A stretch of 64,000 bases of DNA from Asterias rubens (taxonomy: Eukaryota), in the NCBI RefSeq assembly GCF_902459465.1, contig NC_047083.1, forward strand, positions 496,001-560,000. Direction: 5' to 3'. A program made the translations under genes and the position numbers. This document shows, in pieces, positions 44 to 46,391 of the stretch (positions within the stretch are counted from its first letter, which is position 1; every line of letters starts with the position of its first letter). The notes beneath the pieces are model-generated. The model searched no databases. It was not told the origin of the DNA and was given only the letters and a program-made list of their open reading frames with translations.

Positions 44-472
44 CTAGGAGTAACCGTTCATCATTCCTACAACAGTGCTGTGTTCCTTCGCTCGTAACCT
101 CAGTGCAGCTATACTGTTCGTCCTTCGATCTCCACCCTCCTGCCCACAATGCATCACTCCACCACTCTCCCCGTACTGTCCGTTATATGTATTCACATTC
201 TGTGCAGCTGCAGCGTGTGACATGAACTGCGCAGCGGCGGGGTTACCGGCGGTGACGGCTTGCGCCATGGCGTTGATTGGATTATTGGCTTGTTGTGTGA
301 GTTGGTTGAGCTGGTTGAGTTGGTTCTGATTAGTAACGCCCATAAAACTGGGGAGATTGGACTGAGGTGCCATACATGAGTTGTGAGGAGGTTGTTGCAT
401 CTGCATAGGGGCGGGGTTCATTGTTGAGGTCAGGGGTGAAGACATGTTGTGACCCCATGGCGAGGCCTGCAT
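44..472 (-). CDS. alx1: alx1 last coding exon with OAR motif (TNSIAALRLRAKEH), ends ...GMMNGYS*
   Basis: Pyrimidine-rich acceptor ttgatttgtttag|ATG at 473/472, phase 0; TAG stop at 46-44; OAR motif at about 80-121. Confidence 0.93.
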   Translation of the reverse strand: MQASPWGHNMSSPLTSTMNPAPMQMQQPPHNSCMAPQSNLPSFMGVTNQNQLNQLNQLTQQANNPINAMAQAVTAGNPAAAQFMSHAAAAQNVNTYNGQYGESGGVMHCGQEGGDRRTNSIAALRLRAKEHSTVVGMMNGYS

Positions 473-2132
473 CTAAACAAATCAATCAAAAACAAGAAAA
501 AGATCATTAGTTATCGAAAAGACTAAACTCATCAAAACTGAAATTCCTCTAACTATAAATGTACTAAACCGACATGCAAGCAAACAGCAGTGCCCGAATT
601 TCATGATGTCGTTTCACCTAAAGTATCGATATTATTCGTTGATGGTAAATGAATATTATAACTTTGCAACAGAAACAACCAATACCGCAGGTACAAATTG
701 GTAGTTACATAATCGTCATTCAAAAGAGGGCGCCGTTTATGCGATTTTAACAGAAACAGCTGTAAGTTCCGGTTTTGCAGTAGTTCATCCTACATTGGTT
801 GCCATAAATGAACATCTAAGTACTTCTCAAACTGTTAGTTTTAAACTTTGCAAACAATTTGATGCAAGTATTAATGTTTAATATTCATTTCTGAATATGC
901 TTATGAGAAAAAGGTGTGTAAAGTAACACAGTGCAGTTTGAAAACACTGATTGCGTCATAAAAACATTAAATTCGGAAAAAAACCCACCACAGAGCATCA
1001 TGGTCATATATCTTGATGTTTATTTGGTGTCAGTTTAAAAATTTGAAGTGTCTGGTAACAACTAAAGTTAATATCAATCATTGATATCAAGGTACCAGAC
1101 CAAAATGCTCGGCTTGTGTTTTCATGATGCATGCCACGTGCTTACATGCGTCATAATTGCAATAGTTCATTCCGGTTGGAAACTAATTAAGAAACAACTT
1201 ATAATGAATAACTGAATGTTAATGAGAAAAATCGCATGCAAAACATAAAACCATGCTTGATGTGATATGTGGAGTCTTAACTCGAAAATAACAAAATAAA
1301 TCATAAAAAAGATTGGAAGAAGAACCAAAACGGATTATCGAAAGTAAAAACAGAAACAATGGTAAGAAACGTGCACAAATAAACAAAAAGAAATAAATTG
1401 TAACTTCAACAAAAACCGAGTTCACACATGGCTTGGAATTGAGTGTTTATTCTTTGTTTTGACAAAAAGGGAAAAAATTGTGAGTTTGTGACGGAAGAAT
1501 GAAAACAATCTGGTGGGTATCAAACGAAAAAAAAACATGGTTCTCGTACCTTTTCACAATGAAAATTGCGAACCCACTGCCCCATTAGTCCATAATCTGT
1601 ATGCTTTAAACGAGAAACAGAAAGAAACAAAGAGCAGGGGGTGAATATTTATAAAACCTTTTTTTCTGTTTCAGAAATGTATTAAAATGTTACCCACTGT
1701 GTCCTTTTTGTTTACTTTCTTGTGTTTTAGGCGATACCTTATTTGTAGTGCTCTAACGATCTTCTTTTAAATCGGCTTATAATGAAGGTTTCTTTTGAGG
1801 CTGAATCCGTCAGAATTAAAACTATTGTTGGGAGGAGACTCTGTTTTCAGAGCATGCGCAGATGAGACGAATACTAACAACACTTGTTAATTCTGCTTTA
1901 ATACAACTTGTGTTTTTAAAGAAAGAAATTAATAATGTGTTTATTAGACCATTAGACGAACTGTAAAGCAATACAACTCAAATTTTAAAAATAAAAATCA
2001 CCGTCTACATGTTTAAGAAATAAAAATGAAATCAAAATAATTTTGAATCAAAAGAGGCTGGGCAGGCAATGGCGGGCTCAAAAGTCCGACGATGCTTTGT
2101 GAAGAAGAAAGAAGTCGAAACTAACTAGTTAC

Positions 2133-2303
2133 CATTGGCGACTGGCTATCAACAGCGCCCTCTGCCGCCTGCCCGGAAGCCAGCTTGCGCGTGTCAAATT
2201 CTCGCCGCAGATTTTGCAGGTTCCTGCAAATGCGGAGCATGGCGCCCTCAACGGGCGCCGGTGGCTGAGTGATGTCGCCCACGTGGAACCCGGGGGGACT
2301 CAC
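2133..2303 (-). other. alx1: Alternatively spliced 57-codon exon extension encoding Alx1 Domain 2 (VSPPGFHV...VEGAMLRICRNLQNLRREFDTRKL...SPM)
   Basis: 171 nt open and in frame between two donor sites. Peptide matches the echinoderm Alx1 Domain 2, reported as alternatively spliced and gained by exonization (Khor and Ettensohn 2017). Confidence 0.85.
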
Positions 2304-2435
2304 CTGTGAGTATGCGTCGGGTCGTGGGGCTATAGGCATTTCGTAGCCACCGCCGGGCCCTATACCACGCATGCCCTGCAGCTGTTGGAAGCGCTCCCTC
2401 TTCCGCCATTTTGCACGACGATTCTGGAACCATAC
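2133..2435 (-). CDS. alx1: alx1 exon 3, long form: homeodomain helix 3 (VWFQNRRAKWRKRE) plus Domain 2 extension
   Basis: Acceptor ctttctctctcag|GTATGG at 2436/2435. Proximal donor CAG|GTGAGT at 2304/2303 and distal donor ATG|GTAACT at 2133/2132, both phase 0. Confidence 0.93.
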
Positions 2436-28765: not shown

Positions 28766-29130
28766 CTGCACACGTGCTTCAGTTAGATCACATCTCAGGG
28801 CGAGCTGCTCCCTACAATACACGTCTGGATAATGTGTCTTCTGGAAGACCCTTTCCATCTCCTCAAGTTGGAAGCTCGTGAAGGTTGTCCTGTTTCTTCT
28901 CTTCTTTCTCTTAGAGGCATCGTCCCCCTTAGAGCCCTCGCCATCCTTCCCGTCATCACCTTTATTGTTGTTATTCTCCTCGGAGGATTTGTCACGTGGA
29001 CTACCGGCTGAGGCGTCGTGCAGGTCGGAGGACTTACCGCCTGCCGTTCCGACTCCGGAGGGGTTGACGCTATCATTGTCCTTAACGGACTCGCCGATTG
29101 GTGACGTCAGAGGTGTCATGTCTTTGTTAT
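28766..29130 (-). CDS. alx1: alx1 exon 2: homeodomain N-terminal arm, helices 1-2 ([49 protein letters not shown])
   Basis: Acceptor ttttacattcacag|AT at 29131/29130 (phase 1). Donor CAG|GTAAGA at 28766/28765 (phase 0), at the typical PRD-class homeobox intron position between codons 46 and 47. Confidence 0.95.
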
Positions 29131-38572: not shown

Positions 38573-40317
38573 CCAAATGTAGCATTTGCTGTCTAGTCTG
38601 GCACCCTATGTGCGCTCATGCGTTTTGGGGACCCAAAGTTTTTTCTATGTTTTCAATTCAATATTGGTTTATTTTATAAAAATACATCTCCAAGTAAAAA
38701 GTCACAACTGAATTTAGTTTACAAAATTTGGTTTACAAAAGTGGTATCTAAATATCACAGACAAGAGCTGTGGAAAGGAAATAATACAAATAGTAAACAT
38801 TATGTGTGCTAATGGCAAGGTTTGTATTGCACCACGTGATCGGAGAAATGGTAAACACATCTGGGTAACTTATAGACCTTTCTTTTGCAACGTCACAGCC
38901 CGAGTTTTTGCCAACCTAGGTTGGAAACCTATGGAAATCCATAAATGCAAAACAAAAACAGATCGCTACTGTTTGTAACAATGTTACACAAATATTCAAA
39001 CATTGTGTTAATTTTGTTGAAAACAAAACAAATATTTATGGGCGTATTTTAATTGATTGAAAAATTTCAGAAAATGTGGAACTTGGTTAAAACATCTGAT
39101 AATACGATATTCAGTGTTTTACAAATATTCGGCCGTCCATGCCAACCAAGGCGGTTTGTTTATCAACAAAAGAAAGATCTATAGCATCAACGTGGCTTAG
39201 CAAAAACTAATCTGAAAAGACTTGAGTAAACCTACTTTACAAAATGATGGACAACCCTGGAACATGCAGAGCGATTTGTCTTATACACGAGGAAAACAAT
39301 TCACATCGAACCCCTCTGGGAACGAGGTTGTGTATGATATACACGGGCGGTCTGTTTTTCATTTCCCACGTGTCCTCTGGGACGGTTATCGACATTCTAT
39401 ACAGGAAAACACTCTTCATTTTTGTTTTCCCACCCACAACTTGAAAAGAAAAGAAAAAAAGTTGGCAATCTGTCCAGCCGTCAATGGGAAAGGAGGAAGG
39501 AATTGTCTGTAGTTTTCGCTCTTTACCAAATTTGTTTTTAAAGTGACAGGGATATAAATAATTCCCGGACAGGTCCTGCAGTCCTCAGTGTAACTTATAA
39601 GAAAGTTGGCGTCACTTCAAGATGGAATATTCACGAGGAACAGTTAGCAGGAAAACATTCTTAAAAGTTTTCCATATCCATGGTCCAGTGACTAGACTGC
39701 AAGACTTGTCATCACAATGTTGTGGAGTCAAATCTTACTAAGCTATAGCCACGGGTTTCACAATGACTAGACTAAGTATTTGCGTCTAGTTACAGAATCA
39801 AAACTTCTTGATTTGTGCAAATCATTACCAAAGTTTGAATGAGAGAGATTGGCTGTTGCCAGCTTGGTGTTACTAGTATAAAGCTCAATGGAGGGCCTGT
39901 TAAATGTTAAATTGATTCATTGATACATATTTATATCAATTTTTATATCAGCGTTTTTCTTTGTTTGTTAGGGTTCTTGTTTGTTTGTCTGTTTGTTTGT
40001 CGATAATGCAGTTATTTTGTTTTTCTTTTTTAGCTGGGGCAACGGTTTAAGATTTTATACAGTTTATTAAACAAAGGAGCAAAATGTTTTCTTGGGTTGG
40101 AATGAAGGAACTCTGAGATCATTGTTGACTCATCGTCCCTTTAAAGCCCCCATTGAGTCATTTGCAATCACAGGCAGACAAACTCGACGAAGCGTCTAGA
40201 GTGGTTAGTCACGCTCCGTTACGTCCAAATGCCATAGAAAGGCCATGGTATAGAATCACTACAATTATGAAAAATAATAATAGAATTAAGGGTAACGGTA
40301 GAGTGGCATTAAAAACC

Positions 40318-41120
40318 CATAAAGGGGACGAGGTGGGGCGAACAGGAGGAGGGGGAATGATGAGAAAATTGATGAGGTGTGGAAAAGAGTAGATGGTGGA
40401 GGAGGAGGAGGATGGTTGGTGGATGAAGGGAGAGGTTTTGTGGATGTGTAAGATGAGGCGAGTGGAAGTTGTTTGAATGAGCAGCAGGTTGAAGTAGTGG
40501 ATGAGAAGGAGAAGATGGTGGGGCGAACAGGAAGAGAGGGAATGATGAGAAAATTGATGAGGTGTGGAGAAGAGGAGATGGTGGAGGAGGAGGAGGGTTG
40601 GTGGATGAAGGGAGAGGGTTTGTGGATGTATTATAAGAGGAGGCGAGTTGAAGTTGCTTGGATGAGCAGCAGGTTGAAGTAGTGGATGGGAAAGAGAAGT
40701 TGGGACGAACAGGAGGAGGGAATGATGACGAGATTGATGAGGTGTGGATGAGAGGAGATGGTGGATTGAGGGAGAGGGTTGGTGGATGAAGGGAGAGGGT
40801 TTGTGGATGTGTAAGAGGTGTGTGGAAGTTGTTTTTATGAGCAGCAGGTTGAAGGTGGATGAGAAAGAGAAGATGATGGATGAGGAGATTGACGAGGTGT
40901 GGAGGAAAAGAAAGATAAAGGAGGAGATCTTGTGGATGTAAGAGGAGGGATGGTGGTGGATGGAGGAGGAGGATTTGAAGATGCGTGGTAGGAGGGAGTG
41001 GAAGTTGTGGATGATGATGGTTGGATGTGCAGGTGATGGTGAATTGTATACAGGGAGGTGATGGATTTGGAAAGAGGATGGTGGATAGAGACTTGGTGGC
41101 ATGGAGGAGGCGAGTGAAGA
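40318..41120. repeat. Purine-rich (GGA/TGG) minisatellite, about 185-bp unit, decaying into low complexity
   Basis: gg(g/a)cgaacagg...gaatgatga...gatgaggtgtgga starts at about 40335, 40520 and 40702. Confidence 0.85.
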
Positions 41121-41479
41121 TGAGATAACAATTATGATGTGCTCATGGCAATGGGTGGGTTTGTATCCACGTTCAAACCGGGGACCTAGAACAAAAGGAA
41201 CATAGGGTCTATGTTTGCTATCACAAAGGAAAACAAGGGGGTACACCATTGCTATCACAAAGAGTTGAACAGAGTCCACGATTGCAGGTGTATACACACT
41301 TGTGTGTGGGGGGGGGGCTTTCGTATTCTCTGAAGATCTTTGTCTCTCGATAGTAAAAAAAAAACCTGAGAGGCAAAATTAAGGAACCTCCAAATTGTTA
41401 CAATTAAAGGAAGACATAACTCAAGTCACTCATCAGCAAGGCTCAGACACCTTTATCAACATTAATACCGAGTACAACA

Positions 41480-46159: not shown

Positions 46160-46391
46160 CGGGCGATGGTGACTCCCCGCTACCGTTGCGGCCTCGGGCA
46201 CCCCCGTTACCGAGAATCCCGTCGATTGAGTGTGGCATACCGTAGCCAGGCCTGCAAGGCCCGCCGGCCAACGCGTTGGCGAGCCCCGTCGCCGTCTGCT
46301 GCGAGTGGTGCATACTCGGCTCCTCGGACAAGCCGGCGAAAGAGGATTTATGCAGACTTGACATATCCTCCGAAGTGTTAAAAATCATCAT
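46160..46391 (-). CDS. alx1: alx1 first coding exon (MMIFNTSEDMSSLHK...HSIDGILG...ESPSP) with octapeptide/eh1 motif
   Basis: GC-rich ORF ending at donor CCCG|GTAAGA (46160/46159) in phase 1, matching the phase-1 acceptor of exon 2 (G+AT = Asp). The start codon could be 46391, 46388 or 46364. Confidence 0.8.

What the first reader, a model, noticed from the sequence alone, without database searches (positions are those of the whole stretch)
2133..2303. Domain 2 of Alx1 sits between a consensus proximal donor and a weaker distal donor
Seen: two in-frame 5' splice sites 171 nt apart, CAG|GTGAGT (full consensus) and ATG|GTAACT (weaker). The first codons of the extension (V-S-P) are the proximal donor sequence itself. 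Established: Domain 2 is required for the skeletogenic function of echinoderm Alx1, is alternatively spliced and arose by exonization (Khor and Ettensohn 2017). Inference: the D2-less, Alx4-like isoform may be the default here, with D2 inclusion actively regulated. That would be a splicing switch for biomineralization, relevant to sea stars, which build an adult but no larval skeleton.
Basis: partly seen in the sequence, partly recalled or inferred. Interest (0 to 1): 0.7.

Follow-up and report, generated by a model that had tools for sequence, protein, structure and literature searches.

The report
Alternative splice donors in starfish alx1
In the common starfish's skeleton-control gene alx1, one exon can end at a strong early splice signal or at weaker later ones, so the skeleton-making "Domain 2" is left out or kept; this is real, but it was already published for another starfish and is already annotated for this genome.

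Summary
On the minus strand, exon 3 of Asterias rubens alx1 starts at 2435. It carries CAG|GTGAGT (exon end 2304) and, 171 nt further in frame, ATG|GTAACT (exon end 2133).

- The 171 nt encode Domain 2 plus Domain 3.
- A third donor lies 7 nt further on (CTA|GTTAGT, exon end 2126). It is the only distal donor seen in the RNA contigs I laid, and it shifts the frame, giving a product with no OAR domain.
- A conserved 54-nt alternative exon (1603..1550) sits in the downstream intron.

RNA contigs show joints 2304→472, 2304→1603 and 2126→472. One run holds only the D2-less mRNA, one holds all three forms, and a relative holds only the D2-containing form.

All four products match RefSeq A. rubens isoforms X1, X2, X4 and X5 exactly. 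The proximal donor is the ancestral one: alx4, 48 kb upstream, ends its homologous 132-nt exon at the same codons.

Khor & Ettensohn (2017) already described this internal donor, the alternative exon and a developmental shift towards D2 inclusion in Patiria miniata. Erkenbrack & Thompson (2019) already drew the evolutionary inference.

Verdict: a real feature that is already known. "D2-less is the default" stays plausible but unquantified.

The parts
46160..46391 (-). alx1 exon 1 coding part (ATG at 46391; donor CCG|GTAAGA; phase 1)
   Evidence: the joined exons translate exactly to RefSeq A. rubens isoforms.
28766..29130 (-). alx1 exon 2: charged region and homeodomain helices 1-2; donor CAG|GTAAGA
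   Evidence: The loose end of RNA contigs at 2438 reads into the end of this exon.
2304..2435 (-). exon 3 common part (132 nt): homeodomain helix 3 plus Domain 1, ending ...AYSQ
   Evidence: The homologous alx4 exon is also 132 nt and phase 0.
2298..2306 (-). proximal 5' splice site CAG|GTGAGT (exon end 2304): the ancestral donor; its use gives D2/D3-less mRNAs
   Evidence: Joints 472|2304 (X12 depth 10.2, X1 9.57) and 1603|2304 (X1 7.67). It lies in a 17-nt run invariant in 5 sea stars and a 23-nt run invariant in 3. It is the only CAGGTRAGT in the window.
2181..2303 (-). Domain 2 coding sequence (about 41 aa, VSPPGFHV...REFDTRKL); the boundary with D3 is placed by conservation and the published length
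   Evidence: Synonymous invariance is 31/40 codons, against 20/40 in the common part.
2133..2180 (-). Domain 3 coding sequence (about 16 aa, variable between echinoderm classes)
2127..2135 (-). in-frame distal 5' splice site ATG|GTAACT (exon end 2133); gives full-length D2+D3+D4+OAR protein (RefSeq X1)
   Evidence: It is conserved in 5 sea stars. It was not seen as a joint in the contigs laid.
2120..2128 (-). +7 distal 5' splice site CTA|GTTAGT (exon end 2126); shifts the frame and gives the OAR-less RefSeq X5
   Evidence: Joint 472|2126 in X1 (depth 8.59) and X7 (depth 4). Exact match to X5. The same site is present in P. miniata and A. planci, and P. miniata X5 has the same kind of tail.
2056..2125 (-). 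conserved start of the intron downstream of the distal donors (candidate splicing-regulatory element; function inferred only)
   Evidence: 0.88 and 0.70 of positions are invariant in three sea stars, against about 0.3 in the rest of the intron. A 27-nt invariant run spans 2138..2112.
1550..1603 (-). 54-nt in-frame alternative exon (18 aa, HTDYGL...HCEK); acceptor tttaaag|CAT, donor AAG|GTACGA
   Evidence: Joint 1603|2304 in X1. Exact match to RefSeq X2. It is 0.85-0.93 invariant in three species and present in A. planci X1.
44..472 (-). last exon coding part: Domain 4 and OAR domain, stop at 46..44; acceptor ttgtttag|ATG
330..332 (-). TAA stop of the shifted frame used by the 2126->472 mRNA (X5 ends ...FYGRY)
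2268..2304 (-). predicted hairpin pairing the proximal donor with downstream D2 codons (hypothesis, weak support)
   Evidence: It is the local minimum-energy fold in 5 species (-16.4 kcal/mol here). Z-scores are only 0 to -1.8 and there are no compensatory changes.

Best explanation
This is exon 3 of Asterias rubens alx1, an exon with three competing 5' splice sites followed by a small cassette exon. The first site (exon end 2304) is the ancestral constitutive donor, inherited from the alx4-like progenitor, and it matches the consensus almost perfectly. If it is used, the mRNA skips Domains 2 and 3 and encodes an Alx4-like protein, with or without the 18-aa alternative exon (RefSeq X4 and X2). 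If the spliceosome passes over it, the former start of the intron is read as coding sequence (Domains 2 and 3). The exon then ends at one of two weak donors 7 nt apart. The donor at 2133 keeps the frame (X1: D2+D3+D4+OAR). The donor at 2126 shifts the frame (X5: D2+D3 plus a 49-aa unrelated tail, no D4 or OAR). Shown here: the sites, the frames, the RNA joints for 2304 and 2126, the alternative exon, the conservation and the identity with annotated isoforms. Inferred from Patiria miniata and sea urchin experiments: only D2-containing forms have skeletogenic activity, and the choice shifts towards D2 inclusion when the adult skeleton forms. Inferred only: because the proximal donor is so strong, D2 inclusion needs active masking of that donor, by a bound repressor or by a local hairpin.
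For: Exact identity of four spliced constructs with RefSeq A. rubens X1, X2, X4 and X5 comes. RNA joints 472|2304, 1603|2304 and 472|2126 all have GT..AG ends, and isoform content differs between runs. alx4 lies 48 kb upstream on the same strand, and its homologous 132-nt exon ends TAC TCA CAG|GTAAGG. The proximal donor lies in the longest invariant run of a five-species alignment, which includes five consecutive synonymous sites. Echinoids and holothuroids, where D2 is a separate exon, have V-N-S-P and V-G-S-S at that place instead. Synonymous constraint is higher in D2+D3 (43/54 codons) than in the common part of the exon (20/40), Fisher p=0.004. This is what is expected of sequence that serves as both exon and intron. 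The same isoform sets are annotated in P. miniata (X1/X3, X4, X5) and a D2-less form with the alternative exon in A. planci. Published RT-PCR and rescue assays are in PMC5758115.
Against: No quantitative junction counts were obtained for A. rubens. Contig depths are only rough, and the raw-read run gave 7 reads, none on a junction. The tissues and stages of the runs are unknown, so no link to skeletogenesis was tested here. The in-frame 2133 joint was not seen in any run laid, so its use in A. rubens rests on the RefSeq model and on Patiria cDNAs. The donor scores use an approximate matrix written from my own knowledge and a U1 duplex energy, not MaxEntScan.
Confidence: 0.85

Rival explanations
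1. Inverse polarity. In the cells that really express alx1 (skeletogenic cells), D2 inclusion is the ground state, as in sea urchins. The D2-less mRNAs are then a minor or tissue-restricted by-product, not the default.
For: Run X7, from a related sea star, holds the exon as one unbroken contig 2126-2438 at depth 19, with no branch at 2304. In sea urchins the D2+3-containing form predominates at all stages (PMC5758115).
Against: Run X12 holds only the D2-less mRNA, as a near full-length 2191-nt contig. X1 has about twice as much depth on proximal-donor joints (9.57+7.67) as on the distal joint (8.59). The proximal donor is far stronger. In Patiria embryos D2-containing mRNA rises only at late larval stages. 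The A. planci RefSeq model listed as isoform X1 is D2-less.
Confidence: 0.2
2. Use of the internal GT is splicing noise at a site that merely looks like a donor. The nucleotide invariance reflects protein constraint on V-S-P-P-G of Domain 2.
For: D2 is highly conserved as protein. GT dinucleotides are common, and one CAGGTRAGT per 64 kb is the chance expectation.
Against: The site is the homologue of alx4's constitutive donor. Synonymous positions are fixed in five sea stars, while the amino acids themselves differ in classes where the site is not an internal donor. D2-less mRNAs are assembled as major forms in two runs and are annotated in three species. Published RT-PCR shows stage-dependent change.
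Confidence: 0.04
3. Mechanistic sub-hypothesis. D2 inclusion is set by a conserved RNA hairpin (2304..2268) that buries the proximal donor, from position -1 to +13, against D2 codons G-D-I-T-Q. This would resemble the stem-loops at tau exon 10 or SMN2 exon 7.
For: RNAalifold predicts it in all five species. It is the local minimum-energy fold in each (-16.4 kcal/mol in Asterias, Patiria and Acanthaster, against -12.2 for the U1 duplex). All four substitutions in the 3' arm keep a wobble pair, and 98.5% of cells are paired against 31-69% when partners are slid.
Against: The fold is not clearly more stable than shuffled sequence (z = -1.4, -1.8, -1.4, 0.0, -0.9). No compensatory change is possible because the donor arm is invariant. 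The structure was derived from the same sequences, which inflates the slid control. The 3' arm is under protein constraint anyway.
Confidence: 0.2

Closest known systems
Patiria miniata alx1 alternative splicing (Khor & Ettensohn 2017, eLife 6:e32728, PMC5758115)
   Same: The architecture is the same: D2+D3 is continuous with the homeodomain exon. [quoted passage not shown] The donor and alternative-exon sequences are identical or nearly so in the P. miniata genome. The RefSeq isoform sets correspond one to one.
   Different: The species and order differ (Asterias, Forcipulatida). No staged RT-PCR exists here. In the two runs with a distal joint, only the +7 frameshifting donor joined directly to the last exon was assembled. 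The paper describes that kind of donor together with the alternative exon.
Echinozoan (sea urchin, sea cucumber) alx1 Domain (2+3) cassette exon
   Same: The D2 motif is homologous and the upstream exon ends at the same ...YSQ position. D2+3 skipping exists as a minor isoform, and so does a frameshifting donor at the end of D3 in Lytechinus.
   Different: There D2+3 is a separate exon with its own acceptor, and inclusion is the predominant state. Here it is an exon extension governed by competition between 5' splice sites. I could not fetch echinoid genomic DNA.
alx4, the tandem paralogue (C23:590.7-606.7 kb in this genome)
   Same: It has the same 132-nt, phase-0 exon ending TAC TCA CAG|GT, and the D2-less alx1 mRNA has the same exon logic.
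   Different: alx4 has no D2/D3 reading frame after its donor, because the read-through has stops and no similarity. It shows no sign of an extension.
Structure- or repressor-masked 5' splice sites (tau exon 10, SMN2 exon 7)
   Same: This is a functional analogy only: a donor whose use may be tuned by a local stem-loop.
   Different: This is recalled from general knowledge and not tested here. The predicted stem is statistically weak.

Membership tests
Echinoderm Alx1 (as opposed to Alx4) | Paired-class homeodomain and C-terminal OAR domain | tested here: met
   The homeodomain motifs are in exons 2 and 3, and the OAR motif is at the end of the last exon. The identical RefSeq protein P0100 carries PF00046 and PF03826.
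Echinoderm Alx1 (as opposed to Alx4) | Presence of the Domain 2 motif between the homeodomain and OAR | tested here: met
   The 41-aa D2 aligns with echinoid, holothuroid and asteroid Alx1 and is absent from Alx4 proteins. The HMMER search of 1.84 billion representatives with D1-D3 found 7 proteins at E<=0.001. Three were strong (E<=1e-30) and came from sea-star alx1, and the other four matched only part of the query.
Echinoderm Alx1 (as opposed to Alx4) | Tandem linkage with alx4 | tested here: met
   alx4 exons lie at C23:590712-606742 on the same strand, about 48 kb upstream of alx1.
Asterozoan-type D2/D3 exon extension with internal alternative donor (Khor & Ettensohn 2017) | D2+D3 in one open reading frame continuous with the homeodomain exon | tested here: met
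   the same holds in five sea-star sequences.
Asterozoan-type D2/D3 exon extension with internal alternative donor (Khor & Ettensohn 2017) | Functional GT donor at the first codon of D2, used in RNA | tested here: met
   Joints 472|2304 and 1603|2304 with GT..AG ends in runs X12 and X1.
Asterozoan-type D2/D3 exon extension with internal alternative donor (Khor & Ettensohn 2017) | In-frame alternative exon between D3 and D4 | tested here: met
   1603..1550, 54 nt, joined in RNA, in RefSeq X2 and conserved in P. miniata and A. planci.
Asterozoan-type D2/D3 exon extension with internal alternative donor (Khor & Ettensohn 2017) | Developmentally regulated shift towards D2-containing mRNA at skeletogenic stages | not testable with these tools
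   Isoform content differs between runs, but the runs' stages and tissues are hidden.

The most novel reading that the evidence does not exclude
In forcipulatid and valvatid sea stars the main D2-bearing alx1 mRNA may not be the textbook full-length form. It may instead be the +7 frameshifted one (exon end 2126), which encodes homeodomain+D1+D2+D3 with no Domain 4 or OAR. In that case the gene toggles between three protein classes through a conserved tandem donor (GTAACTAGTTAGT, followed by about 70 nt of conserved intron). Published agarose-gel bands, which cannot resolve 7 nt, would then mix the in-frame and frameshifted forms. By the sea urchin rescue data (HD+D1+D2 suffices) such a protein could still be skeletogenic.
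Probability: 0.3. Interest if true: 0.4.

Novelty: already known. Interest (0 to 1): 0.2.

Why it matters
Alx1 is the pivotal regulator of echinoderm skeletogenesis, and Domain 2 is what separates it functionally from Alx4. A splice-site choice that adds or removes D2 is therefore a plausible lever for when and where a skeleton is made, including the lack of a larval skeleton in sea stars. That idea and the underlying gene anatomy are already in the literature (2017, 2019) and in the RefSeq annotation of this genome, so the finding adds no new biology. This follow-up adds details:
- The proximal donor is shown to be the alx4-type ancestral donor.
- Nucleotide-level constraint on the donor and on D2/D3 is quantified.
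- The distal donor seen in RNA contigs is the frameshifting +7 site.
- A candidate masking hairpin and a conserved intronic element give concrete targets for minigene work.

Tried and rejected
1. Dual-coding selection on the first 143 nt of the last exon, which the X5 mRNA reads in a second frame. Nucleotide conservation looked high there, but synonymous invariance (23/37) does not exceed that of the common part of exon 3 (20/40, p=0.36). The comparison with the rest of the last exon is biased by indels. Rejected.

2. Hairpin masking of the proximal donor. It is predicted consistently but is not statistically distinguishable from shuffled sequence, and it has no covariation. Kept only as a hypothesis.

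3. Raw-read quantification. Run X21 was read to 1865 million letters and gave 7 reads, all in the last exon, so no junction information.

4. Fetching P. miniata X5 and Lytechinus genomic loci by exact protein failed. The P. miniata and A. planci loci were obtained through their longest isoforms instead, so no echinoid DNA comparison was possible.

5. MaxEntScan is not available. I used an approximate position matrix written from my own knowledge and ViennaRNA U1 duplex energies.

6. I first guessed that X7 was Patiria. Its variant letters match neither P. miniata (14/35) nor A. planci (16/35), so it is a third relative.

7. Searches of the scan's own notes gave nothing on alx genes.

8. Later literature holds nothing on A. 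rubens alx1 isoforms.

Full report
WHAT IS IN THE SEQUENCE

The feature lies on the minus strand. An exon begins at 2435 behind the acceptor ctctcag| and encodes homeodomain helix 3 followed by "Domain 1", ending ...PDAYSQ.

- CAG|GTGAGT ends the exon at 2304.
- The frame stays open for another 171 nt (57 codons, starting V-S-P-P-G-F) up to ATG|GTAACT, exon end 2133.
- Seven nucleotides further on lies a third GT, CTA|GTTAGT, exon end 2126.
- Reading through all of them meets a stop after V-T-S.
- The next coding exon starts at 472 (ttgtttag|ATG) and runs to a stop at 46..44, ending in the OAR motif.
- Upstream, exon 2 is 29130..28766 and the coding part of exon 1 is 46391..46160.

IDENTITY

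A HMMER search with the non-homeodomain part of the exon found only 7 proteins at E<=0.001. The three strong hits (E<=1e-30) came from sea-star alx1. The cluster members are Patiria pectinifera and P. miniata Alx1.

A word-based search with P. miniata Alx1 brought in four Asterias rubens RefSeq isoforms. Spliced constructs made from window coordinates translate exactly to them:

| RefSeq isoform | Exon joins | Length | Product |
|---|---|---|---|
| X1 | 2435..2133 + 472..44 | 442 aa | full length |
| X4 | 2435..2304 + 472..44 | 385 aa | D2-less |
| X2 | 2435..2304 + 1603..1550 + 472..44 | 403 aa | D2-less with alternative exon |
| X5 | 2435..2126 + 472..330 | 349 aa | frameshifted, no OAR |

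The window is therefore A. rubens alx1, and every splice choice discussed here is already annotated. The window is C23:496001-560000 of its assembly. alx4 lies at C23:590712-606742 on the same strand, about 48 kb upstream, which is the published tandem arrangement.

RNA EVIDENCE

- 472|2304: in X12, as part of one 2191-nt mRNA contig at depth 10.2, the only form in that run. Also in X1 at depth 9.57.
- 1603|2304: in X1 at depth 7.67. This defines a 54-nt, 18-codon alternative exon, 1603..1550.
- 472|2126: in X1 at depth 8.59 and in X7 at depth 4.

X1 is at least 99% identical to the window. X7 is a related sea star, 90-97% identical, and is neither P. miniata nor A. planci. In X7 the exon is one unbroken contig, 2126-2438, at depth 19, with no branch at 2304.

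No 472|2133 joint appeared in any run. Contigs drop minor variants, so this shows only that the +7 path outweighed the in-frame path in X1 and X7, not that 2133 is unused.

The raw-read run X21 gave 7 reads, all in the last exon. So more than one junction is used and isoform content differs between samples, but stage, tissue and true ratios are unknown.

DONOR STRENGTH

These scores come from an approximate consensus matrix, written from my own knowledge, and from U1 duplex energies.

| Donor | Matrix score (bits) | U1 duplex (kcal/mol) |
|---|---|---|
| 2304 (proximal) | 12.6 | -12.2 |
| Exon 2 donor | 11.0 | -11.0 |
| Alternative-exon donor | 7.5 | -5.6 |
| 2133 (in-frame distal) | 6.4 | -5.0 |
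| 2126 (+7 distal) | 3.3 | -1.7 |

CAGGTRAGT occurs only once in the window, at this site.

ORIGIN OF THE PROXIMAL DONOR

The homologous alx4 exon in this genome is also 132 nt and phase 0, and it ends TAC TCA CAG|GTAAGG. The alx1 proximal donor is therefore the ancestral constitutive donor. D2+D3 is former intron read through it, as the exonization model of Khor & Ettensohn holds.

CONSERVATION

I compared the window with genomic loci of P. miniata (L008), A. planci (L009) and two unnamed sea stars from marine metagenomes (L001, L004).

- All five keep CAG|GTGAGT. The longest invariant run of the five-way alignment is the 17 nt CAGGTGAGTCCCCCCGG, covering five consecutive synonymous sites (shuffle P=0.057 for such a run anywhere).
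- Echinoids have V-N-S-P and holothuroids V-G-S-S at the start of D2. The fixation in asteroids is therefore not explained by protein constraint alone.
- Among Asterias, Patiria and Acanthaster, synonymous invariance is 43/54 codons in D2+D3 against 20/40 in the common part of the exon (p=0.004). This fits sequence that must serve as both exon and intron.
- The tandem distal donors with their surroundings (27 nt, 2138..2112) are identical in these three. Conservation continues about 70 nt into the intron and then falls to background.
- In L001 and L004 the in-frame donor is kept, but the +7 site is degraded to GTCGTT and GTCGAA.
- The alternative exon is 0.85-0.93 invariant and has identical splice sites in the three named species.

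HOW INCLUSION MIGHT BE ACHIEVED

A near-perfect donor has to be passed over for D2 to be included. RNAalifold predicts a hairpin in all five species in which positions -1 to +13 of the donor pair with D2 codons 8-12 (2304..2268). It is the local minimum-energy fold in each species. All substitutions in the 3' arm keep a wobble pair except one at the terminal pair.

The evidence is weak, however. Z-scores against shuffles are only 0 to -1.8, and covariation is impossible because the donor arm is invariant. I keep it as a testable idea with odds of about 0.2. A repressor on the invariant C6GG tract or on the conserved intron start is an equally untested alternative.

COMPARISON WITH THE LITERATURE

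Khor & Ettensohn 2017 (PMC5758115) report the following for P. miniata:
- D2 and D3 lie in one reading frame with part of the homeodomain.
- RT-PCR shows five variants. [quoted passage not shown] They also show that homeodomain+D1+D2 suffices for rescue in sea urchins, and that OAR, D3 and D4 are dispensable. By that assay the OAR-less X5 product could still be active.

Erkenbrack & Thompson 2019 (PMC6499829) state outright that gain or loss of these isoforms early in development could explain the loss of a larval skeleton in asteroids.

VERDICT

Its claim that D2-less is the default fits donor strength, ancestry and two of three RNA data sets, but it has not been quantified. The only mildly new points are these:
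- the predominance of the frameshifting +7 donor in the contigs examined;
- the extended conservation around the tandem donors;
- the excess synonymous constraint on D2/D3;
- the weakly supported masking hairpin.

Noticed in passing
P0090 (Patiria pectinifera cDNA-derived protein BAU71482.1), compared with window 1603..1586 and 2303: This deposited protein carries the first six residues of the alternative exon (HADYGL) between ...AYSQ and VSPPGF, that is, before D2. The alternative exon lies downstream of D2/D3 in the three genomes examined, so linear splicing cannot give this order. It may be an RT/PCR chimera of two isoforms. The protein also reads SPK instead of SPM at the D3/D4 junction.
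   Followed up: partly
window 2056-2125 (minus strand): The first ~70 nt of the intron after the distal donors are 70-88% invariant among Asterias, Patiria and Acanthaster, while the rest of the intron is about 30%. This may be an intronic splicing regulator. I spotted no UGCAUG (Rbfox) motif by eye.
   Followed up: partly
window 602-755, 1246-1411, 1339-1509: Low-depth (2-5) contigs from the RNA-type runs X1 and X12 lie inside the intron without joints. They are probably pre-mRNA or DNA carry-over. Conservation there is only slightly above background.
   Followed up: no
window 40209-41297 (minus-strand ORF of 362 aa) / 40332-40879: The longest ORF in the window, inside alx1 intron 1, is low-complexity (S/P/H/L-rich). 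It coincides with a 185-nt minisatellite (3 copies, 86% matches), so the ORF is an artefact of a repeat and not a gene.
   Followed up: yes
RefSeq names of P0100, P0101, P0109, P0111 (all encoded by window 44-46391): Isoforms of this one gene carry three unrelated automatic names: 'homeobox protein orthopedia-like' (X1), 'retinal homeobox protein Rx2-like' (X5) and 'ALX homeobox protein 1-like' (X2, X4). The P. miniata isoforms are likewise split between 'pituitary homeobox 1-like' and 'ALX homeobox protein 1-like'.
   Followed up: no
L001/L002/L003 and L004 (marine metagenome and Tara Oceans contigs): Plankton 'metagenome' assemblies contain contigs of up to about 17 kb from unnamed sea stars (about 80% identical to A. 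rubens in this exon). They are presumably from larvae or environmental DNA and are useful as extra asteroid sequences.
   Followed up: partly
G000:C23:590712-606742 (outside the window): alx4 of A. rubens lies on the same strand, about 48 kb upstream of alx1. Its homeodomain-helix-3 exon is 132 nt with donor CAG|GTAAGG, and the following intron is about 340 nt.
   Followed up: yes
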